Positions 810-43,839 of a stretch of DNA of 64,000 bases are shown piece after piece. Under the pieces are notes generated by a model. The model did no database searches. It saw only the letters and a program-made list of their open reading frames with translations, and had not been told where the DNA came from. Numbering within the stretch: position 1 is the stretch's first letter; the number at the start of each line of letters is the position of its first letter. The stretch lies in IMG/VR virus record IMGVR_UViG_3300021338_000003, positions 1 to 64,000 of that record; one strand, given 5' to 3'. The position numbers and the translations under genes are program-made.

Positions 810-2597
810 CTATACCTCAATATCAGTGATGGGGGTAACGTTCTCGGCCATACAACCAGTACAATTCACTCTGGATCCAAACCAGTTGCGGCTTTCGGAT
901 AGAGTTTCCTTTCCACACTCAGGACAAAGACCCGGAACGACTCGGCTTTGGAACCCAGAAACGACCCCATCCTCCGAGAAATCGAGGCCGATGTCCCCAT
1001 TCACTCGCTCATTCCTGAAATAGGGCTGGGTCTCGATGTCCTTGGGATAGACGAGGGTATAATATGTCTGGGTCCTATGGTCGAATGGTTCCTTAACCCT
1101 AGACCCTTCCTCGATGACCTTCACCAGGGACTTGAGGTTGGACATCAGGGGCTTGATGTCCGCCATTGTGTCAAAATGACCTCGAAACTTAGATGCCACT
1201 ACCATCTCAGCCCAGGAACTGGAGGACAGGATATTAAGAATAAGTTCACCACGCAGAGTGATTTGGCATGTACTGGGTCCAATCTTCTTCAGCAAACCCT
1301 GACTGAACAGACTTGCCATGACCCGACCAAAATTGGATTGGCGGTCCATGGAATACTCCCGGATAGCCGTCCGCAAAAGGTGACCCTCTGACACATTGGG
1401 ACTGGGCACATACCACTTCTGGACCACAGAAGAAGACTCTACAACAAATTCAGACGCCTTGAACCCTCTTTTGGGAAGGACGTTCTTGTCATCTAGGGTT
1501 GGTTTGGACACGAAGAGCATGCTCTTTGACCCCAATGGCCTCCTCTGACCAGGACCATCCCACAACTTCCACTGGATGGTGCTGCCCTTATTTGCAGACT
1601 CCAAAGCGAGGAGGGCCTGTGACCATACCCACTTGTAAATCACACCCTCGTCAGAGGAGGGATGATCAGCAGGAGTCACAGCAGGGTCTACAGGTTGAAT
1701 GAACAGTGGACCCGGACGCTGAGAGACCCCAGCCGTCTTATATCCCGCGGCCTTCAGAACTTTCTTTCCTCCCCGGATGAATTCTGGATCCATACCATCC
1801 TTAGCCCCCAGTACAGCAGTAATCATCCCACTGCTTTCCAATTTCTGTAGAGCTTTGATTATCCTTGAGCCCGGAAGGCCAACCTCAAGGCAAATATCAT
1901 AAACAAGACTGCCCAGGTTGAGCACAGATGGAGTACTACGACCCGTATCCCACTTGGACACAGTGTCTACAGTCAGAAACCCAGATTCGGCCATCCTCTG
2001 GTATCGTCTAGCAATGCCTTCAGACCCAACACATCCAGACTCCAAAACAACGTCCACTGGACCGCTCAATTTGGTCCGGCATATCCACTCGCATGAGACC
2101 ATCCGTCGACTCTGGAACATTGGCACCGCGGCGATGTGGAGAAGCAACAATTCCCCGACCCCAATGTTCACAGAAGTGCCCAAATATTCGGTAAGAGCCC
2201 GGGAGATATGAAGCCTGGAGAGACCTCGGGCTGCCGTCAGAGCAGTATACTGCTCGATGGCCCCCAGGTCAATGGACTGCTTCTTTCGAAGGGCAGAGTC
2301 CAGACCCTTCTTGTCGGTCACCCTGGAGAGGTCCACCCTGGTACATTTGGCGTCGGGGTGGAACGCCTGCACTTGTTTCTGGATGGCCAGAGATAGAGCC
2401 TCGCCTTCGTTGGTCTGGGGGAACCCCAAGTATACCACGTCTGTGTCCAGATTGGCCAACGTGGATACGGTTCCCGGGTGAAGGGATATCCCCTTTGGAC
2501 CCACCTTCATTCGGTGCTCGGGTAGACAAAGCACCGAATCGTGGATACGACCCAGGAATTCAGCCCGGCTAGGGGACTGCACGAAAATAACGGACAT
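810..2597 (-). CDS. Type IA DNA topoisomerase homolog, predicted catalytically inactive, with C-terminal zinc ribbon
   Basis: Colinear with TopA motifs: IFVQSPSRA (IVESPAKA), VYLGFPQTNEGEAL (IYLATDxDREGEAI), LQKLESSGMITA (AQRLYEAGYITY), IYKWVWSQ, PNVSEGHLL. Ends with CPECG...CTGC. Confidence 0.8.
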   Translation of the reverse strand: MSVIFVQSPSRAEFLGRIHDSVLCLPEHRMKVGPKGISLHPGTVSTLANLDTDVVYLGFPQTNEGEALSLAIQKQVQAFHPDAKCTRVDLSRVTDKKGLDSALRKKQSIDLGAIEQYTALTAARGLSRLHISRALTEYLGTSVNIGVGELLLLHIAAVPMFQSRRMVSCEWICRTKLSGPVDVVLESGCVGSEGIARRYQRMAESGFLTVDTVSKWDTGRSTPSVLNLGSLVYDICLEVGLPGSRIIKALQKLESSGMITAVLGAKDGMDPEFIRGGKKVLKAAGYKTAGVSQRPGPLFIQPVDPAVTPADHPSSDEGVIYKWVWSQALLALESANKGSTIQWKLWDGPGQRRPLGSKSMLFVSKPTLDDKNVLPKRGFKASEFVVESSSVVQKWYVPSPNVSEGHLLRTAIREYSMDRQSNFGRVMASLFSQGLLKKIGPSTCQITLRGELILNILSSSSWAEMVVASKFRGHFDTMADIKPLMSNLKSLVKVIEEGSRVKEPFDHRTQTYYTLVYPKDIETQPYFRNERVNGDIGLDFSEDGVVSGFQSRVVPGLCPECGKETLSESRNWFGSRVNCTGCMAENVTPITDIEV

Positions 2598-2606
2598 TTG
2601 CTCTCC

Positions 2607-2930
2607 CTAGAACAGGCCGAGAGGGCGTAGCCTGTCCCCTAGTGAGTTCAGGTCATCCTGATTTAGCAGGACGTCATGGATGATCTTACCATCCTTGAAG
2701 AAGCGAATCCGTGGGGCCCGAGCGATATCCACCAGGTGGCTTTGAGTCTCATCGATAGGCATCACAAACACTGGTTGTGATCCCTTAATACCATGAAGGT
2801 GCTCGACGAACTTCAGATGCTTTTTGGTTGGCGCTACCATCAGAAGGGCAAACTCCTGATTATCCCTGATAAGAGAGGTATATTGGTGCGCATGGACGTA
2901 GGTGAAACCTTCAGACCCCACGAATTGCAT
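2607..2930 (-). CDS. Thioredoxin-fold protein with no cysteines
   Basis: 107 aa. APRIRFFKDGKII matches the thioredoxin cis-Pro/beta hairpin (PTLLLFKNG), and VFVMPIDE resembles VAKLNID. The WCGPC position reads APTKKHL. Confidence 0.55.
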   Translation of the reverse strand: MQFVGSEGFTYVHAHQYTSLIRDNQEFALLMVAPTKKHLKFVEHLHGIKGSQPVFVMPIDETQSHLVDIARAPRIRFFKDGKIIHDVLLNQDDLNSLGDRLRPLGLF

Positions 2931-2938
2931 ATCTTACC

Positions 2939-4237
2939 TCACTCCATCGGCCGACGCTTGCGCCGACGCTTGCGAGGTGCCTCTTCGGAATCAGACTTGG
3001 TCGGAGGGCGCTTGCGCCGACGCTTACGCGGAGGCGGGGCCTCGTCCTCGCCATCAGCAGGAGGACGAGACTTGCGGGTACGAGTCCGAGTCTTGCCTCT
3101 GGCGGACTTGCTACCGGTCTTCTTCGAACGACGGCGACGGCGAGGAGCCTCTTCCTCCTCCTCGTCATCTTCGGAGCCCGTGTCCTTCCAAGCGTTATCG
3201 TTCTCATCCTTGCCTTCATACAACTCACGACGGGGGCGACCGTCGTCGTCATAATACCCAGACCGCTCCATGAACCGACGCATGTTGTCAGGGTCAACGT
3301 CAGCAGCCGCCATCTCTTCCAGAGGAAGAAGACCGGCCTCCTCGATCACCTTCATGCCTACCAGCGCCTTGGGGTTCTCACGACGGAGCTTGAAAATCCC
3401 CATGATATTGGTCTTCTTGCCGTTCTTGAGAATGTAGCGGCCGAAAACCTCTTTTATCTCATCTGAAGTGAGAGGGTGATTTGGAGCGTCATTGCACTTC
3501 TGTACGGAATACATGTCGTCGGCACGACGAGCCGTCTTGTCGAGGCTCATGGTGATGTCAAATCCCTGTTTGGGGTCAGCGGGATCGACACGTTCAAACT
3601 TGGCGATCTTATCGATAGCCTTCATAGGAGTGTAGGGCATTCCAGATTTACCCAGAACACCGAAGTCAGAATTACCCTTGACCACATCCCGGCCGCGGAT
3701 CGTCTTGACGTTGCGCTCGAAGCAGAACCACCAGGTACGCTGATTTGGGCGGGACTTGAAATCATCACACATGGGGCAGCAAAGGCGGTCCAGACGGACG
3801 GCCTTACCATTTTCCATAGCCCGAGGACAGAACCGGTCCTTGTTGCGGTCCGTTCCTCTGGGCACCTCGATCCCCTGTCGCTCCAGGGCGACAGCCTTTA
3901 CGACCTCGGAATCATACCAGCCCTGACCGGTCTTGGGGTTCTTCCAATCAACAACCTTCTCACGGAAGAGGTCGAACTTGGGGCAGAGGAAAGGAACACC
4001 AGGCGGAGCCTTCGGGGGCTTGAACTCCCTGCCCTCGGCGATGGCCTTTTCTCGCATTGACCCGAGCTTGTCAGCGTAGTCGCCGGCTCCCTGAACACAC
4101 CAATGGTTGGCGATGTCCTGGACGGGACCCACAAGCCGGAAACGACGATTCCGGTTATCAGGTACGATGAAGTTGACATCCTCGTCCCAGCGGCTGCGTC
4201 GCTCGCTGCCGCGGTCACTGTAATTGCGCATATTCAA
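2939..4237 (-). CDS. Putative single-stranded DNA-binding protein (T4 gp32-like) with acidic then Arg/Lys-rich tail
   Basis: RRFRLVG...HW, CCPMCD, DPKQGFDITMS and MYSV resemble the gp32 pattern. It lies in the same operon as recA. Confidence 0.6.
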   Translation of the reverse strand: MNMRNYSDRGSERRSRWDEDVNFIVPDNRNRRFRLVGPVQDIANHWCVQGAGDYADKLGSMREKAIAEGREFKPPKAPPGVPFLCPKFDLFREKVVDWKNPKTGQGWYDSEVVKAVALERQGIEVPRGTDRNKDRFCPRAMENGKAVRLDRLCCPMCDDFKSRPNQRTWWFCFERNVKTIRGRDVVKGNSDFGVLGKSGMPYTPMKAIDKIAKFERVDPADPKQGFDITMSLDKTARRADDMYSVQKCNDAPNHPLTSDEIKEVFGRYILKNGKKTNIMGIFKLRRENPKALVGMKVIEEAGLLPLEEMAAADVDPDNMRRFMERSGYYDDDGRPRRELYEGKDENDNAWKDTGSEDDEEEEEAPRRRRRSKKTGSKSARGKTRTRTRKSRPPADGEDEAPPPRKRRRKRPPTKSDSEEAPRKRRRKRRPME

Positions 4238-34376: not shown

Positions 34377-35117
34377 ATGAGCTTGGACAAAACACCTGAC
34401 CTTCCGCCTCTACGGGAACCGAGGAGGGAAGAACTCTCGGACTCGGAGCGGATCGACCAAACCATTCGCGTGCTCAGTGCTGTACGCGGCGAATTGAAAA
34501 GTGTGTCTGTGCAGGTGGCTTCCCTCAATGGGCACATAGCCACCGAGATATCAGCTCTTACTACTTCTATTACGACGTTGAGTAGTCGCATCCGAACCTT
34601 GGAATCACACCGTCAAGACGAAGAAAGAGACAACGAAATACACCAAGCCAAAAGGGAAGCCAAAAGGGAGGGTAGGGATGAGGGGTATATCCAGGCAGCC
34701 CAAGACATTGCTGCCCGTCTCGGCATCAATACCGAGGATGTCTTGGCTATGCGTCAGTCAGATACCTTGGTCCCCAGGGCCCGGGACCATGGACCATCTA
34801 TCCCTACTAACCCTGGAACCGCAACCCCACTATCCGAGAAAAAACCGCACTGGGTCATCCAGGCTGTTGGGACCTTTTTCTCCAATACTATCAGCCTAGC
34901 TGGCACCGAGGGCGGGAAACGTCTGATTGTAGGGGCCGTCGCTTTGGGCCTCGGTCAAGACGCTATTATTACTCTTGGGAAAATCATAGAGAAAATAGAC
35001 CCAACGCCAGCCCAAGTGGTATCGGTTGAAGTTGGCAACCCAGATACAGATGCGGACGCCGACGTTGACATAACCGAAAGTGACGCCGATACAGATGCCG
35101 ATGGGGGACCACGGTGA
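34377..35117 (+). CDS. Coiled-coil membrane protein with acidic DADAD tail
   Basis: Heptad region, hydrophobic LIVGAVALGLG and C-terminal DTDADADVDITESDADTDAD. Confidence 0.6.
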   Translation: MSLDKTPDLPPLREPRREELSDSERIDQTIRVLSAVRGELKSVSVQVASLNGHIATEISALTTSITTLSSRIRTLESHRQDEERDNEIHQAKREAKREGRDEGYIQAAQDIAARLGINTEDVLAMRQSDTLVPRARDHGPSIPTNPGTATPLSEKKPHWVIQAVGTFFSNTISLAGTEGGKRLIVGAVALGLGQDAIITLGKIIEKIDPTPAQVVSVEVGNPDTDADADVDITESDADTDADGGPR

Positions 35118-36286
35118 ACATACTGCGCAAGACGATTCTGGCCAGGTTTGATAGCATACTGCTATACCATGGAACCGACGCCTATAACGTTGAATCCATT
35201 CTCCGTCAAGGCTTGAAACCCCGTGGGTCAGTGGGCAACCTGGGTTGGGACAAGAATACCCTCGTCGACGTGAGAAACAATTCTGTGTTTCTCACAGCTG
35301 ACATCGAAAAGGCCGCTCGATATTCTTTTGGTGAAGAGAAAGACCAGGTACCAGCCATCCTTGAAATTCGCATTTCTGGACGCCATGCCCAAAAACTCAA
35401 GTATGATCCTCTTGACCGTAATGATGCTGCATGGGAAATAGACGATGAGGGCGGAACTGATTTTGAAGCCCTCGTTATACTAGAAGACATTGCTAGTGAT
35501 GCCATACGTAACATCACTGGTCACAAACCCCACTTTTCGGTTAGGGGACTACCTCAATTCCATGAGGTAGAGGATTTGGATGGGGTTAATGTCTACAAGG
35601 TCCTACCTCAAGCCATCCTGAAGGTGCTAGACTCGAACTGGATTACTAGGAAGGATGTGGTTCGGGCTATACAGGATGCACTTAAGAAGTGGGGTAGGGC
35701 CAACAAGAGAACCCCTGGGCAGTACCAGTCAATCAGTATTCACCCATACCTAGACGTGCGAAGAGACGGCACTATCAAAATGTCCAAAGACTGGATGGAA
35801 ACCCGAGAACAATTGTTCTATCAAAAGGGGTTACCCCCAAGTACTATCAAAGGTGTGTGGTTTAGGGAGATTGACTTTCGATCATCTGGTATTAATCAGA
35901 TGAAGGTCGATGAAAAGTCATTCGGGGTCAGACGCCTACCATACGAGGTGGTCGAGGACCATCAGACATCCATAGAAATCACCAACAAAATCATCAGAAA
36001 AGAATATTACACAGTCGACATGCTATATCGGAATTCGGAAGATTTTTTGGTAGTATCCGACCACCTGGAGAATATGGGCCTCGAAAGATGGGAAGAAGTA
36101 GACCATCTTCAGACTCTGACCCGGGAAGAAATCGAGGAGGATTTTGAATCCTTGATAGACACTCTTGCTGAAAGTGCAATCTATATACAGGATGACCTCC
36201 ATAACAGTCACGGAAATGACCCTGCTATTCATGAAGATTTGTGGATTCTCGTAAACCCTAGGGATGCCATGGAGCTTGTGTCATGA
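35114..36286 (+). CDS. ADP-ribosyltransferase-fold protein (KptA/PARP-like clade)
   Basis: LLYHGT...SILRQGLKP...VFLT...A.RYS...AILEI, with a distal EQLFY...LPPSTIK. Confidence 0.65.
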   Translation: MNILRKTILARFDSILLYHGTDAYNVESILRQGLKPRGSVGNLGWDKNTLVDVRNNSVFLTADIEKAARYSFGEEKDQVPAILEIRISGRHAQKLKYDPLDRNDAAWEIDDEGGTDFEALVILEDIASDAIRNITGHKPHFSVRGLPQFHEVEDLDGVNVYKVLPQAILKVLDSNWITRKDVVRAIQDALKKWGRANKRTPGQYQSISIHPYLDVRRDGTIKMSKDWMETREQLFYQKGLPPSTIKGVWFREIDFRSSGINQMKVDEKSFGVRRLPYEVVEDHQTSIEITNKIIRKEYYTVDMLYRNSEDFLVVSDHLENMGLERWEEVDHLQTLTREEIEEDFESLIDTLAESAIYIQDDLHNSHGNDPAIHEDLWILVNPRDAMELVS

Positions 36287-36819
36287 AATCCAAGTATAAC
36301 CTCGCCGTTCCCAAGTTAGCCAAAGCTTGGGGAATTGTTGAGAAAATGGGAAAGTCCGAAAACCCCGAGGTACTTGGGTTTCATGAAGAGCTTATCAAGG
36401 CCCTCGATACGTCCAAGTGGACAGACGCCGAAGACCAGATGCTCGCGAAGGTGACCGAGAGGGCCAATTATCTGCGGCACGTGTTGGACATGCACTTCGC
36501 CAAGGACACGGCACAGGGGAAATGGAACCCTGATGTTCCATCAACAGGACACTGTGCTGTTGCGGCCATAATCGGACACTGGATGTTCAGGTGGCGGGTT
36601 GGCAGTAGTATAGTCAATCAGGCCAGTCACTGGTACAACATGGCCCACGGTCTCACTATTGATATCACCGGTGACCAATTCGGAAAGCCTGAAGTCCAAG
36701 TGTCCCGAAGCATCTTGTATCCGCACAAGCACCGTGTTCGCGCTATCAGTGAGGCCAATGAAGAGACCATCAGGCGCGCCAACTTGCTAGCCCAACGAGC
36801 CGGATTGGTATATTCATGA
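36283..36819 (+). CDS. YunG-like papain-fold protein
   Basis: GHCAVAA...SHWYN...DITGDQF (Cys-His-Asp/Asn). Confidence 0.6.
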   Translation: MKSKYNLAVPKLAKAWGIVEKMGKSENPEVLGFHEELIKALDTSKWTDAEDQMLAKVTERANYLRHVLDMHFAKDTAQGKWNPDVPSTGHCAVAAIIGHWMFRWRVGSSIVNQASHWYNMAHGLTIDITGDQFGKPEVQVSRSILYPHKHRVRAISEANEETIRRANLLAQRAGLVYS

Positions 36820-37154: not shown

Positions 37155-37664
37155 ATGAAGTCCAGCACCCCCACCACCAAGGCTTTCTCGGGCCAGGAAG
37201 TGGAGCTGACCCTCAACCACGGCGAGGGCACCATGCGGCCCCGCAAGGTCAACGTGACCGCTGCTGATGCCCTCGGCATCGCCTATGAGTGGTCGTTCCG
37301 CGGGTCGCCCCGTGAGGACTTTGCCCCCTGGAGCGCTGTCCATATGATTTCGCTCAAGCATGGTCCGAGCAAGGAGTTTCCGCCCAAGTCCTGGGCCAAG
37401 ACCTTCAAGAAGTCCAAGCCCGCTGGTGCCACTGGTATGGTTGTGGTTGGCAAGAACTGCGAAGTCATGATCCGTGACCTCGGCACGGATGATACCGAGA
37501 AGGTCACCACCATCAAGGGCTACGTGCAGACCATTGACGACCAGGCTGCCATGATCGTCCACAACCGGTTCGGTCAGGTATACCAGTCGACGATCCCCCT
37601 CACTCACGTGGTGAACATCGAATACCGTGAGAAGAAGGATACGAAGCCGCCCGGCGTCGCCTGA
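37155..37664 (+). CDS. Hypothetical beta-barrel protein (possibly tandem Sm/SH3-like)
   Basis: Two similar halves (GQEVEL...PWSAVHMI; GKNCEV...PLTHVVNIEY) and high GC3 codon bias. Confidence 0.55.
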   Translation: MKSSTPTTKAFSGQEVELTLNHGEGTMRPRKVNVTAADALGIAYEWSFRGSPREDFAPWSAVHMISLKHGPSKEFPPKSWAKTFKKSKPAGATGMVVVGKNCEVMIRDLGTDDTEKVTTIKGYVQTIDDQAAMIVHNRFGQVYQSTIPLTHVVNIEYREKKDTKPPGVA

Positions 37665-37696: not shown

Positions 37697-37729
37697 TAGG
37701 CCACCCTAGGGAAATCCTTGGGTGGCCTA
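37697..37729 (+). terminator. Intrinsic terminator-like hairpin
   Basis: TAGGCCACCC-taggGAAAtcctt-GGGTGGCCTA after the 37155 ORF. Confidence 0.65.
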
Positions 37730-37824
37730 TCTGTATACGAAATACTTGCACATCTGAGATATAATGTGTTATATTCCTAGTGTGGTCGTGAGAGACCAGG
37801 GAATTCAACAACAGGAGAGATACC

Positions 37825-38649
37825 ATGTTCGGTGGTGATGATTCGTGGGATGAGGACGATTGGGGCGAGTGGAGCGAGGACGGGGATTCGTCCGGGGCTG
37901 CTTCCGATGACAAGCCGGCTGAGGAGGAGGCCCCCAAGCCTGCTGCTGCCAAGCCGGCAGCCAAGAAGAAGCGGCCCGCCAAGGCCAAGGCGGTTGACAA
38001 GCCCGCTGCGGCCAAGAAGAAGCGGCCCGCCAAGGCCAAGGCGGTTGACAAGCCCGCTGCGGCCAAGAAGGCAGCTGCGGCGAAGAAGGCAGCTGCGGCG
38101 AAGAAGCCAGCCGCTGCCAAGAAGCCTGCGGCCAAGAAGGGTCCGCTGGTTCCGCTGACCTTCTTCAAGGCCGGTGACAACCTCGTTCTCCAGAAGAACG
38201 ACCCCCAGACTGGCGAGGCGCAGAACTTCAACAAGGCGCACTTCAAGAAGGGTGCCCTCAAGGGTCTGATGACGTACGACTTCAAGTCGGTGGGCTATAC
38301 TACGCCCTACGCCCAGATCAAGGAGCTTCGGGCCGCCCTGAAGGAAGCTGGCTACAAGCTCGTTCGTGGCAAGGCTCCAGCTGCTGCGAAGCCGGCCGCT
38401 TCCAAGAAGCCGGCCGCTTCCAAGAAGCCGGCCGCTTCCAAGAAGCCCGCGGCTGCGAAGCCGGCTGCAGCCAAGAAGCCGGCCGTCAAGCTGGCCAACC
38501 GGAAGGCGTACAACACCCTCGTGTCCTCCATCCGGGACAGCCTGGTGATGGTCGGTGCTCGCTTCAGCGAGGACGACGCCCGCAACGCCCTGGACTACTT
38601 CCTGTCGCGCCCCGAGGCGTCCGTCAGAGATGCCTGGGACAAGCGGTGA
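37825..38649 (+). CDS. Histone H1/AlgP-like Lys-Ala-Pro-rich DNA-binding protein with acidic N-terminus
   Basis: KKPAAA repeats in two blocks; N-terminal DDSWDEDDWGEW; AGGAG RBS. Confidence 0.75.
   Translation: MFGGDDSWDEDDWGEWSEDGDSSGAASDDKPAEEEAPKPAAAKPAAKKKRPAKAKAVDKPAAAKKKRPAKAKAVDKPAAAKKAAAAKKAAAAKKPAAAKKPAAKKGPLVPLTFFKAGDNLVLQKNDPQTGEAQNFNKAHFKKGALKGLMTYDFKSVGYTTPYAQIKELRAALKEAGYKLVRGKAPAAAKPAASKKPAASKKPAASKKPAAAKPAAAKKPAVKLANRKAYNTLVSSIRDSLVMVGARFSEDDARNALDYFLSRPEASVRDAWDKR
37960..38061 (+). repeat. 51-bp perfect tandem duplication in the histone-like gene
   Basis: GCCAAGAAGAAGCGGCCCGCCAAGGCCAAGGCGGTTGACAAGCCCGCTGCG twice; an 18-bp unit also occurs three times at about 38389-38442. 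Confidence 0.9.
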
Positions 38650-38656
38650 GAGCCCT

Positions 38657-38747
38657 TGTTCTCAAACCATTCCATTATCCCCCTGATGGAATGGTTTGAG
38701 AACATCAGTGATGAACCCCCTACAACTTCCAGAGTAGGGGGTTCATC
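38657..38747. terminator. Double hairpin between convergent genes
   Basis: 18-bp stem TGTTCTCAAACCATTCCA/TGGAATGGTTTGAGAACA (38657-38704) and 13-bp stem GATGAACCCCCTA/TAGGGGGTTCATC (38710-38747). Confidence 0.75.
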
Positions 38748-38789
38748 TGTATTAGGAGTAGCCGTGGGCCAAGACCGTACTGGGAACCT

Positions 38790-39722
38790 CTAGACGTCCC
38801 GACACTTGATTTTGAGTTGAGCCTCCATCCGTATGCTGCCGCCTTTGGACAGACGGATGTTTCGAGACTCCTCCCACGACTTGCGAACGCTCCTAGCCGC
38901 CTCAGACGGGGGCGTATTGCATTCTAGAACCCTTCTCATCTGGGCTACCAGGTCCTCCCAGTCGTCACCCCATGGCTCATCCTCGATACGCTTGACTGGC
39001 GGAGCATCGAGGGTGGTCACCTTTCCATTCCTAGGGAACTTCTTTCCGGTTTCAGTTCGGAACACCATCTCCGATGTACCACGAGGGTGGGTTTGACCTC
39101 TGACCCGTATATCTCTTCCGGCCGCTTTGAACCCAACGCTCCCGGAGAACATGATTTCTGGGCCCTTAGAAAGGTCAAGAGGGTCCTCGTATTGGGTTAG
39201 GAAGCGGCCGTGGGGTCCGTCGAGTATTTCGACGGGGGCGACAGTCCATGAGCCCTCCCCGGGGCCCTCCGAGACCCAGGTCAGGAGCAGGCCCTCGTGC
39301 TCACCATTTCTGACCAGTATTGGAGTGGTTTGGGAATGGGTAGCCAGGGCAAATTCCTGGGCCAGGACCCCACCCACTCTGATGGTCCTGTTTTGGACTT
39401 TCTGTACTTGGTCAGACATATCCTTGAAATGCTCACAGGATATTGACTCGGCACTTCGATGATTGTCCATGCCATCAATAAGGCCCAAGTCCGAGCATGG
39501 TTTGGACTTCCTGTAGCGACTGAACTTTGTCCAAAATTGGCATTCGCCACAAGTGGCATGGGTCAAGGGGGTGTACTTATCACAGAGGTAGTCAGGGGGT
39601 GTTCCGATGACCTTCTTACCATCTATTTTGACCCTTTTGGATACCTTGCACGTACGACCCCGCACCTTGTGTTGCCACAAAAAACAGGTGGCACAACTTG
39701 GGGGTGGTTGACTGTTTGCCAT
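38790..39722 (-). CDS. Hypothetical protein with two tandem 4-Cys modules
   Basis: CATCFLW...C...CDKY and CGECQFW...C...CEHF. Confidence 0.65.
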   Translation of the reverse strand: MANSQPPPSCATCFLWQHKVRGRTCKVSKRVKIDGKKVIGTPPDYLCDKYTPLTHATCGECQFWTKFSRYRKSKPCSDLGLIDGMDNHRSAESISCEHFKDMSDQVQKVQNRTIRVGGVLAQEFALATHSQTTPILVRNGEHEGLLLTWVSEGPGEGSWTVAPVEILDGPHGRFLTQYEDPLDLSKGPEIMFSGSVGFKAAGRDIRVRGQTHPRGTSEMVFRTETGKKFPRNGKVTTLDAPPVKRIEDEPWGDDWEDLVAQMRRVLECNTPPSEAARSVRKSWEESRNIRLSKGGSIRMEAQLKIKCRDV

Positions 39723-39731
39723 TCGCCCCTG

Positions 39732-40067
39732 TTACTCCTCTGGATCGCCCTCTGGTATGTTGAGGGGCTCGGTTATGAGGTACTCGTCGTAGTCCTCTTC
39801 ATCTTCGTACTCGACCTCATATTCCTCATTGTCTTCAGTGATAGTGGTCATGTACTCGTATACCTCGGGGCTCACGATGCATCGAGTCCAATATGTCCAA
39901 ATTCCGGCCACACCCTCATCCAATTCTGGATCCAGGTAGACGGCTATATTCCCAGTGAATTGAGAGATGGTAGCAATGTTGTGTGCCATGTCCTCAGAAG
40001 GTATGCGGCACACAACAGGGAAGTGGTCGATGAACTCGGGAATTTCCCTCTCTTCATCGGTGCTCAT
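39732..40067 (-). CDS. Small acidic hypothetical protein
   Basis: 111 aa with a GGAG RBS and an E/D/Y-rich tail. Confidence 0.6.
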   Translation of the reverse strand: MSTDEEREIPEFIDHFPVVCRIPSEDMAHNIATISQFTGNIAVYLDPELDEGVAGIWTYWTRCIVSPEVYEYMTTITEDNEEYEVEYEDEEDYDEYLITEPLNIPEGDPEE

Positions 40068-40097
40068 TTTCTCTCCCTGTCTACAAAAAAGCTGTCG

Positions 40098-41723
40098 CTA
40101 CTTGTCAGACTTCAAACGACGCCTAACAAAGCTTGCGTGCCGGGTCTTGATGCCGGGGGTATCTTCCTGGCGTTCGATTTCAATGGTAGTACCCAGGAGG
40201 GAATCCCGGATCTCCCAGAACTTCTCTCGTTGGGCATCACTGTAGCCTCCACCCACCTGGATTTCAACTCCGTTGTCAAGACGACATTTCAAACCACCCA
40301 GGATATGCTCATATTTGGTCCCTGGGTTCCCGGGGTAGAACCCAACCACCTCAACGTCCACCGTTTCAAACGGCTTAATACGGTGATATCCACTGCGCTT
40401 TCTATTGCGTTCTCCGGCGGCATAAGAGGCGTCGACATCCTTGATGACGATCCCCTCATATCCCTTGTTGCGGGCAACGCCATACAGATGCATGATCTTT
40501 TTGAACCGGTCCTTGGACCCTACCCGACGGGCAGGGGACAATACCAGACTAGGGGCGATATCAGAGGATCCGTCCAGAAGTTCTTCGATCACCGACCTCC
40601 GGTCACCGAAAGCCACATCAGCGACCCCATCTTCAAAGCATTGGAGGTCCCAGATGAAGTCAAACACCATCAGTTGAAGCGGTCTATCTTCCATATCCTG
40701 GGTGGTTTGGGCGGATACGGCGTCCGAGTACTTAGTCGACCCCTTGGCTACGGCTTCGCAGTCCAGAACCCCCATGGTATACCCACCGGCATTCAGAAGG
40801 GCAGCAGCTTCTCTAACCAGATACTGAAGATGGTCCAGTGGCAGGCCCTTTCGGGAATACACTCGACCCAGACCCTGAGTAGAGTCCGTCACCTGCACCA
40901 AGGTGCGCAGACCATCATACTTGGTCTCGATGATGAGCCTCGGGGGGAGTTCGCTCAGAACTCGCTCCAGGTTGATATCCCTCTTGACCGTAGAACACAA
41001 GCTGACGTTGAAGCTTGGAAGGAGGTCCTTCCATACTTTGCGGACATTTCCTTCCTTGAAACCAATCTTGAGGTCTCGCTGTAGGATACGGAACGCCCAT
41101 TTCCTATACTTGACGGTCATCTTTTCGAGGAGCGTCGTGAGCCGGTCCAAATCCCTCTGGTTGGCGGCTGGCTTCTCATTAAGGGCCCGGAGATGGGCTA
41201 CAAACTTGGTCCACGCCTTAAGTGTGTTGGCCTTACTGCCGGATGTTGACCAGTCAATAGTGAACTTAGAGCCTACCCCATACGCCAGGTGCCAATCATA
41301 GGCCAGAACGAAACAATCTTGCAAAATGGGGTTGTCCTTATGGCCCTCGAACACCTCCAACTTCGGCTTAATTTTGGTTCCGATGCCTTCCACCCTTTCG
41401 AGAGCATTGATGGCAGCAGGCAGGAAATGCCGAAGAGCCCGGGGATCGTAGGGGTCAAGCCCCTTGAGGACCTCTTGCTGGGCATGTTCTTTGCGGATCC
41501 TCTTGAGGTCATCAGCCTCCACTTCGGATATCACGTTCTCTCGAAGGTGCTTCAAGACGATGGCCTCTCGGGATACAGGTGGGAATCCTCCATCTTTTCC
41601 CTGTAGAGCGTGACTGAAAACAACATCGATTTCCGCGGCCTTCATCCTATACTTGAGGCCCTTAGTGACGGCGTCATGGGCCTTGGACCGGACCTTGCTG
41701 AGGGTGTTCATTGAGATCTCCAT
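40098..41723 (-). CDS. ATP-dependent DNA ligase
   Basis: Motif I ETKYDGLR, YSRKG, LDCEA, MVFD, EGIVIK, RIKP, OB domain VGGGYSD and RHASF. Confidence 0.93.
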   Translation of the reverse strand: MEISMNTLSKVRSKAHDAVTKGLKYRMKAAEIDVVFSHALQGKDGGFPPVSREAIVLKHLRENVISEVEADDLKRIRKEHAQQEVLKGLDPYDPRALRHFLPAAINALERVEGIGTKIKPKLEVFEGHKDNPILQDCFVLAYDWHLAYGVGSKFTIDWSTSGSKANTLKAWTKFVAHLRALNEKPAANQRDLDRLTTLLEKMTVKYRKWAFRILQRDLKIGFKEGNVRKVWKDLLPSFNVSLCSTVKRDINLERVLSELPPRLIIETKYDGLRTLVQVTDSTQGLGRVYSRKGLPLDHLQYLVREAAALLNAGGYTMGVLDCEAVAKGSTKYSDAVSAQTTQDMEDRPLQLMVFDFIWDLQCFEDGVADVAFGDRRSVIEELLDGSSDIAPSLVLSPARRVGSKDRFKKIMHLYGVARNKGYEGIVIKDVDASYAAGERNRKRSGYHRIKPFETVDVEVVGFYPGNPGTKYEHILGGLKCRLDNGVEIQVGGGYSDAQREKFWEIRDSLLGTTIEIERQEDTPGIKTRHASFVRRRLKSDK

Positions 41724-41730
41724 AGAATGG

Positions 41731-41759
41731 TTGCCTTTTTACGGCTGCCGTGTTATAAT
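41731..41759 (+). promoter_or_regulatory. sigma70-type promoter
   Basis: TTGCCT-17-TATAAT; shares TGCCGTGTTATAAT with the promoter at 17856-17884. Confidence 0.8.
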
Positions 41760-41776
41760 GGGTTAGGAGGCATCAA

Positions 41777-42145
41777 ATGGCGAAATACATCTTCGTAACG
41801 ACCAATTGTGACGAGTGTGGGAGCATTTTCTCATCCATCTGCAAGGCGGGGGACTACAGCGGAAAGTGCATGGACTGCCAGGAAAAGGCCGAGGCCCCTG
41901 TGGTCAACCCTGAGCACGTTGCGGCTGACTTGGACCAAATCGAAGTTCGGTCTACCGGCGCAGCCAACCGCAAGCCGCGTCCTTTCTTCTGTGACCGTGT
42001 CTGTCTGCATGAATTCGACCTCTCCTTCGTTCAGCATCACGTAGGACTGGATATCAAGGTGTGTGAGTGCGGATGGCATAGAGACTGGACCAACGAAGTT
42101 CACACCAGGCCCTACACCACCCCACAGAAGCCCTGGAGGCGATGA
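41777..42145 (+). CDS. Cys-rich zinc-binding hypothetical protein
   Basis: CDEC, CMDC, CDRVC and CECG; AGGAGG RBS. Confidence 0.6.
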   Translation: MAKYIFVTTNCDECGSIFSSICKAGDYSGKCMDCQEKAEAPVVNPEHVAADLDQIEVRSTGAANRKPRPFFCDRVCLHEFDLSFVQHHVGLDIKVCECGWHRDWTNEVHTRPYTTPQKPWRR

Positions 42146-42732
42146 TGGTACCTATCGATTATGCCTCGTGGTGGGCTGGTTTGCCTTCGGGCCAAGTTTT
42201 CACACCTTGGCGGCAATACATGATCGAGTGTGTGTCCGGAACCCGGAAAATGGAGCCATTCATGGCCTGTCTTTCTCATCCATTAACCACCGAACCCATT
42301 TCCAAGGATCCATTCATCAACGAGCATGAGCTTGCTCACTTCATCCTATGTCCCGATGACAAGGTGTTGGACCCCTTGTGGGGTATCGAGTTTGATGGTC
42401 CCTTCGAAGAGGAATTCAGGGACCTTGACAAGGCACGTTTTGAGGTGCGAGTCCTGTTCATCCAGGAAGTCATTCTCAATTACACTCACCACCGGGAGCA
42501 CTATCTGCAGTGGGTCAAATCCCCGGTCGGTCGAGAGGTGATGCTTAATAACAAGTGTCACCCCTGGATTGGGTCGGTTCAGATGGCAATGACATACTGC
42601 TATATCAGCCCCCTATCGACCGCCCAGGTTCGGCACGAGGTGGACCACATGGTCGCTGCCGACTGGACCATCGGAAAGGTGTGGTCGGAGCTGGAACGAA
42701 AGAAAGAGCTTGTCAGACAGCTTCTGCTGTGA
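42142..42732 (+). CDS. Hypothetical protein
   Basis: 196-aa ORF with ATGA coupling. Confidence 0.6.
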   Translation: MMVPIDYASWWAGLPSGQVFTPWRQYMIECVSGTRKMEPFMACLSHPLTTEPISKDPFINEHELAHFILCPDDKVLDPLWGIEFDGPFEEEFRDLDKARFEVRVLFIQEVILNYTHHREHYLQWVKSPVGREVMLNNKCHPWIGSVQMAMTYCYISPLSTAQVRHEVDHMVAADWTIGKVWSELERKKELVRQLLL

Positions 42733-42783
42733 TAAACCGTAGTCGCCAAAGTAGAACGGGGCATATGCCCCAAAGGAGAGCCA

Positions 42784-43770
42784 ATGGCCGCCAAGAAGTC
42801 CCGCAAGCCCAAGTCCCGCAAGCCCGAGCCCGAGGTCGAGGAAGACGACGATTGGGCAGACGACGACTGGGGTGATGACGAGGAAGAGTCCGACGATGAG
42901 GGGTCTGACGACGATTGGGAGGATGAGGAGCCCGAGGACGATGATGAAGACTGGGGCGATGACGAGGAGTCTGACGACGAGGACGACGAGGAGTGGGAAG
43001 ACGAGGAGTCTGACGACGAGGACGACGAGGAATGGGAAGAGGAAGAGTCCGAAGATGAGGACGACGATTGGGACGACGAAGAGTCCGAAGATGAGGACGA
43101 CGATGACTCGGACGAGGATGACTCCGAGTGGGATGATGAGGACGAAGACGACGACTCGGACGACGATGATGACTCTGACTCTGATGATGACTGGGACGAC
43201 GATGACTCGGACGACGATGATTCGGACGACGATGACTCGGACGACGATTGGGACGACGATGATTGGGACGACGAGTCCGAGGACGAGTCGGACGATGAAG
43301 AGTCGGATGACGAGGACGATGAAGAGTCGGATGACGAGGACGATGAAGAGTCGGATGACGAGGACGATGAAGAGTCGGATGACGAGGACGATGAAGAGTC
43401 GGATGACGAGGACGATGAATCCTCCTCCCTTGCTATGACTCCCCTCGAAGACGGCTCCCTGGGCATCGTAGGCAACGACTTCCCCAAGGGCATCACCAAA
43501 AACCTCCTCAAGGAGCTTGGGTTCACCTGGAATCGCAACAAGAAAATCCCAGGTATCGGTCAGCGTGGTGTCTGGACCCTCGACAAGAAGGCTACCAAGA
43601 AGGTCACCAAGGCTCTCATGAAGCACAATGTGTCCATCACCATGCTCGATGGTGATGAGGGCAAGTTTGCGGCCATGCAGGCCCGTCTCGCCACCCTCCG
43701 CAAGACGTACGATGCCATGGGTCTTGCCTTGCAGGAGTTTGAGGCTCTCCTGAACGCAGCAAAGGCGTAG
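42784..43770 (+). CDS. Extremely acidic low-complexity protein with a globular C-terminal domain
   Basis: About 200 residues of almost only D/E/S/W. Basic N-terminus MAAKKSRKPKSRK; C-terminal LLKELGFTWN...GVWTL; AAGGAG RBS. Confidence 0.85.
   Translation: MAAKKSRKPKSRKPEPEVEEDDDWADDDWGDDEEESDDEGSDDDWEDEEPEDDDEDWGDDEESDDEDDEEWEDEESDDEDDEEWEEEESEDEDDDWDDEESEDEDDDDSDEDDSEWDDEDEDDDSDDDDDSDSDDDWDDDDSDDDDSDDDDSDDDWDDDDWDDESEDESDDEESDDEDDEESDDEDDEESDDEDDEESDDEDDEESDDEDDESSSLAMTPLEDGSLGIVGNDFPKGITKNLLKELGFTWNRNKKIPGIGQRGVWTLDKKATKKVTKALMKHNVSITMLDGDEGKFAAMQARLATLRKTYDAMGLALQEFEALLNAAKA
43291..43419 (+). repeat. 24-bp tandem repeat, five copies plus a partial (DDEESDDE)
   Basis: GACGATGAAGAGTCGGATGACGAG perfect copies start at 43291, 43315, 43339, 43363 and 43387. 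Confidence 0.92.
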
Positions 43771-43791: not shown

Positions 43792-43824
43792 GAGGCCCCG
43801 GTAGCGCTTCCCTACCGGGGCCTC
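43792..43824 (+). terminator. Intrinsic terminator-like hairpin
   Basis: 13-bp stem GAGGCCCCGGTAG/CTACCGGGGCCTC after the acidic protein gene. Confidence 0.75.
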
Positions 43825-43839
43825 CCTGTATTTGGGATA

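What the first reader, a model, noticed from the sequence alone, without database searches (positions are those of the whole stretch)
37825..43770. Histone H1-like protein and ultra-acidic protein sharing Asp-Asp-Trp motifs: possible condenser/chaperone pair
Seen: a KKPAAA-repeat basic protein begins with DDSWDEDDWGEW. About 4 kb away, a protein has roughly 200 D/E/S residues punctuated by about ten Trp (DDDWADDDWGDD...) and a basic N-terminus, so the two have mirror-image charge layouts. Both have strong RBSs, high GC3, recent tandem expansions and their own terminators. The 38790 ORF between them also contains PWGDDW. Known: polyanionic prothymosin-alpha chaperones H1, and aromatic stickers in charged disordered regions promote phase separation. 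Inference: a phage nucleoid or condensate system, or a DNA mimic.
Basis: partly seen in the sequence, partly recalled or inferred. Interest (0 to 1): 0.65.

Follow-up and report, generated by a model that had tools for sequence, protein, structure and literature searches.

The report
Paralogous basic and acidic phage DNA-binders
An uncultivated 251-kb jumbo phage carries two related, probably abundant, proteins that share a small DNA-recognition-type domain, one with lysine-rich histone-H1-like arms and the other with a 200-residue Asp/Glu arm studded with tryptophans; the pair recurs in the only two relatives found, and its function is untested.

Summary

New findings:
- The two proteins are paralogs. 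A's middle domain and B's C-terminal domain are homologous (hhalign E 4.9e-6 through a bridging relative). Both fold as beta-beta-alpha-beta-beta-alpha-(beta).
- Fold searches of both models keep returning the XPB damage-recognition domain, the T4 UvsW N-domain and MutS domain I, at modest scores (Z 5-5.8).
- Only two other contigs in the public databases carry either protein, and each carries both. In one the genes are adjacent.
- The more distant A homolog has a B-like basic-tip plus acidic-Trp arm. The mirror-image charge layout is therefore derived, not ancestral.
- All six proteins keep an acidic Trp motif N-terminal to the domain.
- A and the operon containing B have sigma70-like promoters of one class that occurs 22 times in the genome. 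Their codon bias resembles the capsid gene's. They lie among ligase, helicase and FEN genes.

Best reading (confidence 0.4): abundant non-late DNA-architectural proteins. The polyanionic Trp arm competes with DNA for the basic arms and domain, within one molecule and between A and B. Binding between A and B is inferred, not shown. The family has no sequence match to any known family.

The parts
37155..37664 (+). 169-aa gene directly upstream of A. It looks like a tandem Sm/Hfq-like fold and is conserved next to A in L012.
   Evidence: 53% identity to L012:84-623. The Atlas model (pTM 0.73) resembles tandem-Hfq proteins at TM 0.60-0.64. Capsid-referenced CAI rank is 2 of 308.
37698..37736 (+). 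GC-rich hairpin followed by TCTGTAT. It is terminator-like and insulates A from the upstream gene.
   Evidence: Sequence. One of 8 strong hairpin+CTGTAT sites in the genome.
37746..37775 (+). Sigma70-like promoter of A: CTTGCAC, spacer, then an extended -10 AATGTGTTATATT. It is a diverged member of the genome's 22-copy promoter class.
37825..37932 (+). A residues 1-36: acidic cap with three Trp (DDSWDEDDWGEW), net charge -14.
   Evidence: Conserved as MENDDDWGDWEDSWDDEEE in P0001.
37933..38139 (+). A residues 37-105: first Lys/Ala/Pro (KKPAAA-type) basic arm, net charge +24. It contains a perfect 51-bp x 2.2 repeat.
38140..38373 (+). A residues 106-183: alpha/beta domain (beta-beta-alpha-beta-beta-alpha-beta), net charge +7, XPB-DRD / UvsW-N / MutS-I-like fold.
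   Evidence: AF2 pLDDT is 70-83. Foldseek's top hit is 2fz4 XPB at probability 0.96 and E 0.19. VIA gives Z 5.0-5.2 to XPB chains and 4.8 to UvsW. The Atlas shape search returns XPB_DRD and MutS_I clusters.
38374..38490 (+). A residues 184-222: second Lys/Ala/Pro/Ser basic arm, net charge +11, with an 18-bp x 5.6 repeat.
   Evidence: A basic linker sits at this position in all three A homologs.
38491..38649 (+). A residues 223-274 plus the stop codon: conserved C-terminal three-helix region (VKLxNRKAYN...).
   Evidence: Conserved in P0001 and in the L013 A-like protein (tblastn E 5e-8).
38711..38752 (+). Hairpin followed by CATCTGTAT downstream of A. It is terminator-like and lies between convergent genes.
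38790..39722 (-). 310-aa ORF with a Cys-rich N-terminus and the motif EDEPWGDDWEDL. It is part of the 4-kb block that separates A and B in this phage only.
   Evidence: No Pfam or PHROG family. The motif was not followed further.
40098..41723 (-). ATP-dependent DNA ligase. A ligase also lies next to the pair in L013.
   Evidence: Pfam DNA_ligase_A_M at 3e-17 and PHROG 114 at 3e-71. 31% identity to L013:6080-6724.
41731..41759 (+). Consensus promoter (TTGCCT, 17 nt, TGTTATAAT) of the operon 122 aa - 196 aa - B.
42784..42834 (+). B residues 1-17: basic tip MAAKKSRKPKSRKPEPE, net charge +5.
   Evidence: KSRKPxPEVEE is conserved in L012. Basic tips are also present in both L013 paralogs.
42835..43428 (+). 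B residues 18-215: polyanionic disordered arm of Asp/Glu/Ser with 11 Trp and no other aromatic residue. The last ~54 residues are a perfect 24-bp x 5.4 repeat without Trp.
   Evidence: The L012 ortholog has 10 Trp plus an in-frame TGA where the spacing predicts an eleventh. The Atlas model of the whole protein has pLDDT 0.46.
43429..43647 (+). B residues 216-288: alpha/beta domain homologous to A's middle domain (motif LKELGFTWNRNKK...VWTL). The C-terminal part is basic (residues 233-328, net charge +10).
   Evidence: AF2 pLDDT 74. VIA's top hit is 2fz4_A XPB at Z 5.8, rmsd 1.9 over 54 residues, then UvsW at Z 5.2. hhalign to the A family gives E 1.8e-4, and E 4.9e-6 through L013.
43651..43770 (+). 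B residues 290-327 plus the last residue and stop codon: a 38-residue amphipathic C-terminal helix (...GLALQEFEALL...).
   Evidence: Conserved in L012 and P0005.
43792..43831 (+). 13-bp GC-rich hairpin followed by CCTGTAT. This is the terminator of the B operon.

Best explanation
A and B are a lineage-specific pair of paralogous, abundant, non-late (probably early or middle) nucleic-acid-architectural proteins of a jumbo phage.

Shared plan. Each protein is built on the same small basic alpha/beta domain. That fold is the one SF2 helicases (XPB, T4 UvsW, ZorD) and MutS use to recognise distorted or branched DNA. The ancestral layout is basic N-terminal tip, acidic Trp-punctuated disordered arm, domain, C-terminal helices.

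Protein A. In this phage and its closest relative, A has replaced most of its acidic arm with H1/AlgP-like Lys-Ala-Pro arms. This should make it a high-avidity, sequence-nonspecific DNA coater or compactor, and it keeps a short acidic-Trp cap.

Protein B. B keeps and has expanded the polyanion (net charge about -145, with 11 Trp).

Proposed mechanism (inferred, not shown). The acidic-Trp arm acts as a nucleic-acid mimic or electrostatic shield. It occupies the basic domain and arms in competition with DNA. A's cap would do this within the same molecule. B's eleven motifs would do it between molecules. B would then buffer, load or strip A, and possibly other basic DNA binders. The Trp residues would serve as cation-pi or base-like contact points.

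Shown: architecture, paralogy, co-occurrence, expression signals and fold class.
Inferred: DNA binding, A-B contact and the shield role.
For: - Paralogy. hhalign of A-mid against B-Cterm gives E 1.8e-4. The B profile against the L013 A-like domain gives probability 86% and E 4.9e-6. The secondary-structure order is the same in both AF2 models.
- Fold class. XPB DRD, UvsW-N, ZorD-N and MutS-I are returned for both models by Foldseek-PDB, VIA-wide and the Atlas searches, and weakly by BFVD.
- Basic surface. A-mid has net charge +7 and B 233-328 has +10. Two Lys are invariant across the six domains.
- Linkage. All three contigs that carry either gene carry both. In L012 the order is 169aa-A-B without gaps.
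- Conserved acidic-Trp motif. It lies N-terminal to the domain in all six proteins. The B orthologs share Trp number and spacing although the arm shifts from D-rich to E-rich.
- Expression. One 22-copy sigma70-like promoter class drives A and the B operon and is absent from the capsid gene. Capsid-referenced CAI ranks are 3 (A) and 7 (B) of 308.
- Neighbourhood. DNA ligase, SF2 helicase, DnaB and FEN here; PolX and ligase in L013.
- Precedent. Phage phi29 p6 is a histone-like protein whose disordered acidic tail lowers DNA affinity as an electrostatic shield (PMC10899789).
Against: - No experiment or expression data exist.
- Fold matches are modest: Z 5-5.8 and Foldseek E >= 0.19. That is below the Z 7-8 the tool says unrelated models often reach. 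ACT and eIF1-like folds tie with the DRD hits.
- No Pfam, PHROG or PDB sequence match exists, including XPB_DRD.
- The L013 A-type paralog is net acidic, so a polycation-polyanion pairing is not conserved.
- Complex prediction for the folded parts gave no verdict.
- The sample is three contigs, so co-occurrence is weak statistically.
- Acidic tandem repeats without Trp occur in other genes of this genome, which shows a general tendency to expand such repeats.
Confidence: 0.4

Rival explanations
1. B acts on its own as an anti-host decoy. Its long polyanionic, Trp-studded arm mimics DNA or ssDNA and soaks up host DNA-binding proteins (nucleoid proteins, restriction or other defence nucleases, SSB partners) early in infection. 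A is an independent DNA binder.
For: - Extreme negative charge and predicted disorder.
- Transcription from a host-type promoter.
- High codon adaptation.
- Acidic DNA mimics such as Ocr, ArdA and Arn are a known phage strategy (own knowledge).
- The Atlas structure list for B includes an ArdA cluster at TM 0.48, which is weak.
Against: - It does not explain why A carries the same motif, why the genes are paralogs and adjacent in L012, or why the arm is fused to a basic DNA-recognition-type domain.
- Known DNA mimics are folded proteins with patterned charges, not 200-residue disordered arms.
- No similarity to any PADLOC, Pfam or PHROG anti-defence family was seen.
Confidence: 0.2
2. Both proteins are replication or recombination accessory factors that bind forks or branched DNA through the DRD-like domain. 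Their acidic-aromatic arms work like the acidic tails of SSB, T7 gp2.5 and T4 gp32, recruiting the phage helicase, ligase and polymerase and gating their own DNA binding.
For: - Position among ligase, SF2 helicase, DnaB and FEN genes, with PolX and ligase alongside in L013.
- Fold class shared with helicase substrate-recognition domains, including the weak HARP hit.
- Acidic tails ending in an aromatic residue are the standard replisome tethers in phage systems (own knowledge).
- A neighbouring 111-aa ORF also has an acidic Tyr-rich tail.
Against: - Eleven motif copies and a charge of -160 far exceed what a tether needs.
- H1-like arms and capsid-like codon bias suggest stoichiometric coating rather than a replisome accessory.
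- No acidic-Trp motif was found in a disordered context elsewhere in the replisome genes.
Confidence: 0.2
3. A is a packaged DNA-condensing internal head protein. B is its assembly chaperone and keeps it off DNA until packaging, as acidic chaperones do for adenovirus protein VII or for protamines.
For: - Capsid-like codon usage.
- Complementary charges.
- A paper on other large aquatic phages speculates that H1-like proteins compact the genome for packaging (PMC12619734).
Against: - A and the B operon use the sigma70-like promoter class that the capsid gene lacks.
- The genes lie in the replication module, far from the head genes at 195-216 kb.
- The L013 A-type protein is acidic.
Confidence: 0.1
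4. The charged arms are neutral products of repeat expansion on two small ORFan proteins, and the shared Asp-Asp-Trp strings have no specific function.
For: - Perfect, evidently recent tandem repeats are present in both genes.
- Other genes of this genome also carry acidic repeats.
- The last 54 residues of B's arm lack Trp.
Against: - Trp is the only aromatic residue in 215 residues.
- Trp number and spacing persist between orthologs whose folded domains share only about 47% identity and whose arms differ in Asp/Glu content.
- The N-terminal acidic-Trp motif is present in all six proteins from three phages.
Confidence: 0.1

Closest known systems
Phage phi29 protein p6 (histone-like genome organiser with an acidic tail)
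   Same: A phage-encoded DNA-coating protein made from an early gene. Its disordered Asp/Glu tail lowers its DNA affinity by shielding the basic DNA-binding patch (PMC10899789). This is the same logic proposed here for A's cap and B's arm.
   Different: The fold and sequence are unrelated. The p6 tail is about 20 residues, sits at the C-terminus, has no Trp pattern and acts only within the same molecule. There is no separate polyanionic paralog and there are no Lys/Ala/Pro arms.
Linker histone H1 with prothymosin-alpha; HMGB1 acidic tail (eukaryotic polycation/polyanion disordered systems)
   Same: The Lys/Ala/Pro-rich arms of A resemble the H1 C-terminal domain in composition. B is a long Asp/Glu polyanion that could bind such arms with high affinity while staying disordered (own knowledge of the H1-ProT-alpha system).
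   Different: A has no winged-helix globular H1 domain and no Pfam H1 or Hc1 hit. Prothymosin-alpha has no folded domain and no regular Trp. Here the two partners are paralogs sharing a domain, and binding is untested.
Bacterial and phage H1-like Lys/Ala/Pro repeat proteins (AlgP, Chlamydia Hc1 PF07432, H1-like proteins reported in 'moraphages')
   Same: KKPAAA-type low-complexity arms. An H1-like annotation has been reported for other large aquatic phages (PMC12619734).
   Different: A gives no PF07432 hit at E <= 0.1. Its conserved parts, the DRD-like domain and the C-terminal helices, are not found in those proteins. The one IMG/VR hit to A's arm (L001) is a low-complexity match only.
XPB damage-recognition domain, T4 UvsW N-terminal domain, MutS domain I, SMARCAL1 HARP
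   Same: The same beta-beta-alpha-beta-beta-alpha-(beta) arrangement. These are the top or near-top structural matches for both A-mid and B-Cterm in several libraries. The DRD is described as a DNA-binding domain of repair enzymes and remodelers (PMC6422496).
   Different: Those domains are N-terminal modules of ATPases. Here the domain stands alone between charged disordered arms. Sequence identity is 4-12%, Z is only 5-5.8, and no HMM match to PF18458 or PF01624 was found.
Acidic C-terminal tails of T7 gp2.5, T4 gp32 and bacterial SSB
   Same: Acidic disordered segments with a key aromatic residue. They compete with ssDNA for the protein's own binding cleft and also tether partner proteins (own knowledge).
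   Different: Those tails are single short motifs at the C-terminus of OB-fold proteins. Here there are up to 11 Trp-centred motifs, N-terminal to a different fold.
Phage DNA-mimic proteins (Ocr, ArdA, Arn)
   Same: Strongly acidic early phage proteins that imitate the charge pattern of DNA.
   Different: Those are folded proteins with fixed charge geometry. B's arm is predicted to be disordered, and no sequence or convincing fold similarity was found.

Membership tests
Linker histone H1 / Hc1 (PF00538, PF07432) | Sequence match to the H1 globular winged-helix domain or to the Hc1 family model | tested here: not met
   Pfam scan of A at E <= 0.1 returned no family.
Linker histone H1 / Hc1 (PF00538, PF07432) | Lys/Ala/Pro-rich low-complexity DNA-binding arm | tested here: met
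   A residues 37-105 (24 K, 30 A, 9 P) and 184-222 (11 K, 17 A, 7 P). This is a compositional resemblance only.
XPB_DRD / MutS_I / UvsW-N fold class | Three-dimensional fold match covering the domain | tested here: inconclusive
   For B, 2fz4_A gives Z 5.8, rmsd 1.9 over 54 residues, and UvsW gives Z 5.2. For A, Foldseek's 2fz4 hit has probability 0.96 and E 0.19, and VIA gives Z 5.0-5.2 to XPB chains. The Atlas returns XPB_DRD and MutS_I clusters at TM-by-row 0.49-0.66. The hits are consistent across searches, but the scores lie within the range the tool warns can arise from common arrangements.
XPB_DRD / MutS_I / UvsW-N fold class | Sequence-profile match to PF18458, PF01624 or PF13625 | tested here: not met
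   Each of the six domain sequences was scanned against Pfam at E <= 10 and none matched these models. A profile search against PDB sequences was also negative.
XPB_DRD / MutS_I / UvsW-N fold class | Binding to distorted or branched DNA | not testable with these tools
   Needs EMSA or fluorescence assays with purified domain.
Phage DNA-mimic proteins (Ocr / ArdA / Arn) | Folded acidic protein whose surface charges copy B-DNA geometry, or family sequence match | tested here: not met
   No Pfam or PHROG match. B's arm is predicted to be disordered (whole-protein Atlas pLDDT 0.46). The only ArdA cluster seen scored TM 0.48 on the C-terminal domain, not on the arm.
Polycation/polyanion disordered pair (H1-prothymosin-alpha type) | Two co-expressed proteins with large opposite net charge in disordered regions | tested here: met
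   A has net charge +29 and B has -145. Both are transcribed from the same promoter class. This holds for the window and by composition for L012, but not for L013, where the A-type protein is acidic.
Polycation/polyanion disordered pair (H1-prothymosin-alpha type) | Direct high-affinity binding between the two proteins | not testable with these tools
   Disordered electrostatic complexes cannot be predicted with these tools. The one complex job, on the folded parts, gave no verdict.
New A/B family itself (basic tip, acidic-Trp arm, domain) | Both paralogs present together in every genome that has either | tested here: met
   Window, L012 and L013 each carry both. No other carriers were found. 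The searches were the 5.8-billion-protein word search (three queries), a 1.84-billion-protein HMM search with the B domain only, and scans of IMG/VR and JGI metagenomes. The sample is three contigs.

The most novel reading that the evidence does not exclude
The pair is a phage-encoded polycation/polyanion system. A compacts or coats DNA. B reversibly dissolves or buffers that state through multivalent Trp-Lys (cation-pi) contacts. Together with DNA they would form a tunable coacervate-like replication compartment in a jumbo phage that has no protein-shell nucleus. This would be a bacterial-virus counterpart of H1 and prothymosin-alpha, evolved by duplication of a single DRD-fold protein.
Probability: 0.15. 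Interest if true: 0.8.

Novelty: new variant of a known kind. Interest (0 to 1): 0.55.

Why it matters
Charged disordered arms that gate DNA binding are well studied in eukaryotic chromatin (H1, HMGB1, prothymosin-alpha). In phages they are known only as short tails (phi29 p6, gp32, gp2.5).

Here one ancestral protein appears to have duplicated and split into a strongly basic and an extremely acidic version. The Trp positions are kept under selection, and the signals point to high expression.

If the two proteins do antagonise each other on DNA, this would be a simple two-gene system for studying four things:
- polyelectrolyte competition;
- the role of Trp contact points;
- possible condensate formation in bacteria;
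- how jumbo phages that lack a proteinaceous nucleus organise or protect their DNA.

The work also defines a sequence-novel stand-alone version of the helicase and MutS DNA-recognition fold.

Tried and rejected
Searches with no informative result:
- Pfam and PHROGs on A, B and seven neighbours found nothing for A or B.
- Megablast of the 10-kb region against the phage collection found no match.
- The word search with B's C-terminal part found nothing. The L012 ortholog is called as two short ORFs and so fell outside the length window.
- The word search with P0005 found only itself.
- IMG/VR scans with A, B, the ligase, the domain and full-length alignments, and the 169-aa gene gave only a low-complexity hit (L001) and a spurious 31-residue hit (L014).
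- The metagenome scan returned only the window's own contig, Ga0213839_1000090.
- The genome-contig scan with the 169-aa gene found nothing.
- The other hits of the big HMM search (P0003, P0004, P0006, P0007) are repeat proteins or chance matches.
- Pfam at E <= 10 on the six domains and the PDB sequence profile gave nothing relevant.
- Literature searches found no described acidic-Trp phage protein. One search call failed on term syntax.

Comparisons that failed:
- Direct BLASTP of A against B was not significant.
- The two-sequence hhalign was also not significant, at probability 2.4%. Homology became visible only with the L013 sequences.
- No sequence link was found between B's domain and the N-terminus of the neighbouring SF2 helicase.
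- No third paralog exists in the genome.

Jobs without an answer:
- Complex prediction of A 106-274 with B 216-328 gave no verdict, score 0.00. It is not evidence either way.

Ideas rejected:
- The reverse-strand poly-Ser and poly-Leu ORFs over the repeats are not real genes, because the conserved domain lies in the + frame.
- A genome-wide acidic-Trp short linear motif shared by many proteins was not found. The other instances are isolated and lie in structured contexts.
- Reading L012's in-frame TGA under another genetic code was rejected because the evidence is too thin.

Full report
**Context.** The window is the first 64 kb of a single 250,817-bp contig whose ends overlap, so the assembly is circular. 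Its public name is JGI metagenome contig Ga0213839_1000090. It is a tailed jumbo phage:
- The major capsid protein is 28-31% identical to those of Pseudomonas phage Lu11, phage NCTB and jumbo phages of Erwinia and Pseudomonas putida.
- It has a large terminase and a DNA polymerase.
- No close relative exists in the phage collection or in IMG/VR.
- The genome uses TGA as its commonest stop codon, in 108 of 198 long ORFs, so it reads under the standard code.

**Observation.**
- ORF A (37825-38649, 274 aa) starts MFGGDDSWDEDDWGEW. It then has a 69-residue Lys/Ala/Pro arm (+24), a folded middle part, a second basic arm (+11) and a helical C-terminus.
- ORF B (42784-43770, 328 aa) has a basic tip (+5). 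It then has 215 residues made of 104 Asp, 56 Glu, 25 Ser and 11 Trp (net -160), with no Phe or Tyr, and then a folded C-terminal part.
- Shine-Dalgarno sequences are strong.
- GC3 is raised: 0.80 for A and 0.73 for B, against 0.63 for the genome.
- Perfect tandem repeats are present: 51 bp x 2.2 in A and 24 bp x 5.4 in B.
- GC-rich hairpins follow both genes.
- ORF 38790-39722 (-) contains EDEPWGDDWEDL.
- Dense acidic-Trp motifs occur nowhere else in the genome. Other acidic repeat proteins do exist, but without Trp.

**Relatives and linkage.** Neither protein matches Pfam or PHROGs.
- *L012.* A word search with A's non-repetitive half found one homolog. It is P0001, 56% identical, on a 2.6-kb ENA contig.
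  - The gene order there is 169-aa gene, then A, then B, with no intervening genes.
  - In the window, A and B are separated by a 4-kb block. It holds a 310-aa ORF, a 111-aa ORF and DNA ligase on the minus strand, then two small plus-strand genes.
- *L013.* A full HMM search of 1.84 billion representatives with B's C-terminal domain found one more true relative. It is P0005 on a 6.7-kb ENA contig.
  - L013 also carries an A-type gene (443-1279). Its C-terminal region matches A at tblastn E 5e-8.
  - A family-X polymerase and a ligase homologous to the window's ligase lie alongside.
- *Summary.* All three contigs that carry either gene carry both. No other carriers were found in any collection searched.

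**The two proteins are paralogs.**
- The L013 A-type protein has the B-type front end. It has a basic tip (MAKKSSKSKNK...) and a 75-residue acidic arm beginning EDDEDEEWDDEEDWEDL. These are followed by A's middle domain, a basic linker and A's C-terminal helices.
- Its middle domain carries ELKDAGLSYSRKK, which bridges A's KELRAALKEAGYKL and B's LKELGFTWNRNKK.
- Profile comparison of the B family with this domain gives probability 86% and E 4.9e-6 over 48 columns. The comparison of the A family with the B family gives E 1.8e-4.
- AF2 models give the same order of elements in both proteins. A residues 106-183 have pLDDT 70-83, and B residues 216-328 have mean pLDDT 74. The order is beta-beta-alpha-beta-beta-alpha-(beta).
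- The mirror-image charge layout is therefore a derived state of the window and L012 lineage. The conserved plan is basic tip, acidic-Trp arm, domain, helices.
- No third paralog exists in this genome.

**Fold of the shared domain.** Independent searches converge on one class.
- *A, Foldseek against PDB.* The top hit is the N-terminal half of A. fulgidus XPB (2fz4, probability 0.96, E 0.19). MutS domain I and tRNA-endonuclease N-domains follow.
- *A, VIA-wide.* XPB chains score Z 5.0-5.2, UvsW 4.8 and ZorD 4.1. CASTOR ACT domains tie with these.
- *A, Atlas shape search.* It returns XPB_DRD (PF18458) and MutS_I (PF01624) clusters, plus N-termini of phage SNF2 and ResIII helicases.
- *B, VIA-wide.* The top hit is again 2fz4_A (Z 5.8, rmsd 1.9 over 54 residues). 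Next come the T4 UvsW N-domain (Z 5.2), S. tokodaii XPB, the ZorD N-terminus and Taq MutS.
- *B, other libraries.* The Atlas's own model matches Helicase_C_3-containing clusters at TM 0.44-0.47, and BFVD gives weak hits of the same kinds.
- *Caveats.* The scores are modest, and the tool warns that Z below 8 can reflect a common arrangement. No sequence model of these families matches. I therefore treat the fold class as likely, not proven.
- *What the fold does.* The DRD is described as a DNA-binding domain of repair enzymes and remodelers (PMC6422496).
- *Charge.* Both domains are basic (A-mid +7, B 233-328 +10). Two Lys are invariant across the six sequences.

**The acidic-Trp arm.**
- All six proteins have an acidic Trp motif at the start of the acidic segment, usually a doublet 3-6 residues apart.
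- The two B orthologs share only about 47% identity in the folded domain, and their arms differ in Asp/Glu content. Even so, they keep 11 and 10 Trp at intervals of 5-21 residues.
- In L012 the only longer gap (34 residues) contains an in-frame TGA in the context EDED-TGA-EDED. That is where the spacing predicts a Trp codon.
- Part of the periodicity comes from repeat units of 39 and 27 bp. The last 54 residues of the window's arm are a recent Trp-free expansion.
- In the more distant L013 lineage the punctuation is sparser and mixed: W, I, L and Y.
- The exclusive use of Trp, and its persistence across diverged orthologs, argues for selection rather than repeat drift.

**Expression signals.**
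- The genome has one very clear promoter class. It is a CTTGCAC or TTGACA -35 element plus a TGCCATGTTA(T/A)AAT extended -10.
- There are 22 copies, each 10-50 nt before an RBS and start codon.
- One diverged copy precedes A (37746-37775). A good copy (41731-41759) precedes the operon 122 aa - 196 aa - B. The capsid gene has none.
- Capsid-referenced codon adaptation ranks the upstream 169-aa gene 2nd, A 3rd and B 7th of 308 ORFs. The ranks for A and B rest on few amino-acid types.
- Together these suggest abundant proteins made by host RNA polymerase outside the late class.
- Neighbours are DNA ligase, an SF2 helicase, a DnaB-type helicase, a FEN-type 5'-3' exonuclease and a weak PARP-like (ADP-ribosyltransferase-type) protein.
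- The 169-aa gene looks like a tandem Sm/Hfq fold (Atlas TM 0.60-0.64).

**Interpretation.** The best-supported reading has two parts.
- A is an abundant DNA coater or compactor. It combines the DRD-like domain with H1-like arms.
- The acidic-Trp segment is a nucleic-acid-mimicking shield that competes with DNA for the basic surfaces. A's cap would act within one molecule, and B's eleven motifs would act between molecules.

Phage phi29 p6 is a tested precedent for an acidic tail that reduces the DNA affinity of a phage histone-like protein (PMC10899789). Acidic aromatic tails of T7 gp2.5 and T4 gp32, and the H1-prothymosin-alpha pair, are further analogies from general knowledge.

The steps that are shown are architecture, paralogy, co-occurrence and adjacency, promoter class and codon bias. 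The fold class is shown at moderate confidence. The steps that are inferred are DNA binding, A-B contact, the shield mechanism and expression timing. The one complex prediction gave no verdict, and no read data could be obtained.

Rivals are listed with their own tests:
- B is an anti-host decoy.
- Both proteins are replisome accessory factors with SSB-like tails.
- A is packaged into the head, with B as its chaperone.
- The arms are neutral repeat products.

**Novelty and verdict.** The family has no sequence relatives outside three uncultivated phage contigs and belongs to no described family. Its ingredients are each known: H1-like arms, acidic shields and a DRD-type fold. The combination has no described counterpart that I could find. 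That combination is a paralogous basic/acidic pair built on a stand-alone DRD-like domain, with a long Trp-punctuated polyanion.

I rate it a new variant of a known kind, interest 0.55.

Noticed in passing
L012:1940-1942 (B ortholog, codon 113): A single in-frame TGA interrupts the B ortholog where the Trp spacing predicts a TGG. All 10 complete genes examined on L012 and L013 end in TAA or TAG and none in TGA, whereas the window genome uses TGA for 108 of 198 stops. This could be a sequencing error, a nonsense mutation or TGA avoidance or recoding in those relatives. The data are too few to name another code.
   Followed up: partly
window 37698-37736, 38711-38752, 43792-43831, and 36190 (-); genome 83247, 174905, 205603, 233381: There is a recurrent element: an 11-14-bp GC-rich hairpin followed directly by (C/A)TCTGTAT(T/A). 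Eight strong copies occur in the genome, and three of them bracket A and close the B operon. It looks like a phage-specific terminator or processing site without a normal U-run.
   Followed up: partly
genome-wide, 22 sites, e.g. window 17866 (-), 18256, 37765, 41749: There is a highly conserved promoter class: a CTTGCAC or TTGACA -35 element and a TGCCATGTTA(T/A)AAT extended -10. Each copy lies just upstream of an RBS and start codon. The class is absent before the capsid gene, so it is probably the host-polymerase (early or middle) regulon of this phage.
   Followed up: partly
window 37155-37664 (+): This 169-aa gene is conserved next to A in L012. Its codon adaptation is second only to the capsid gene. 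Its Atlas model resembles tandem Sm/Hfq domains (TM 0.60-0.64). It may be a third nucleic-acid-binding member of the cluster.
   Followed up: partly
window 39732-40067 (-): This 111-aa ORF has a C-terminal acidic, Tyr-rich tail (EEYEVEYEDEEDYDEY). It is another acidic-aromatic segment lying between A and B.
   Followed up: no
window 38790-39722 (-): This 310-aa ORF has a Cys-rich, zinc-ribbon-like N-terminus and the motif EDEPWGDDWEDL, which resembles A's cap. It has no family match. Whether the motif is functional or conserved was not tested.
   Followed up: no
window 35114-36286 (+) and 36283-36819 (+): A 390-aa protein has a weak PARP-catalytic-domain match (E 3e-4, below the Pfam cut-off), which may indicate an ADP-ribosyltransferase. 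A YunG-family protein (E 1e-12) lies next to it, just upstream of the cluster.
   Followed up: no
genome 81733-82260 (L002:17733-18260) and 210521-212689 (L009:6521-8689): Other genes carry long perfect acidic tandem repeats without Trp, for example PEAAD x7 followed by DEEDS and DEEE runs, and DSDDS runs. This genome readily expands acidic repeats.
   Followed up: partly
genome 195599-199510 (L008:11599-15510): The large terminase ORF is 1303 aa. The terminase profile matches in three stretches within residues 77-700. This suggests an insertion such as an intein, or a fused extra domain.
   Followed up: no
L013:4899-6053 and 2409-4178: The distant relative carries a family-X DNA polymerase next to its B-type gene, and a 589-aa protein with no family match between the paralogs. 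Neither has a homolog in the window genome.
   Followed up: partly
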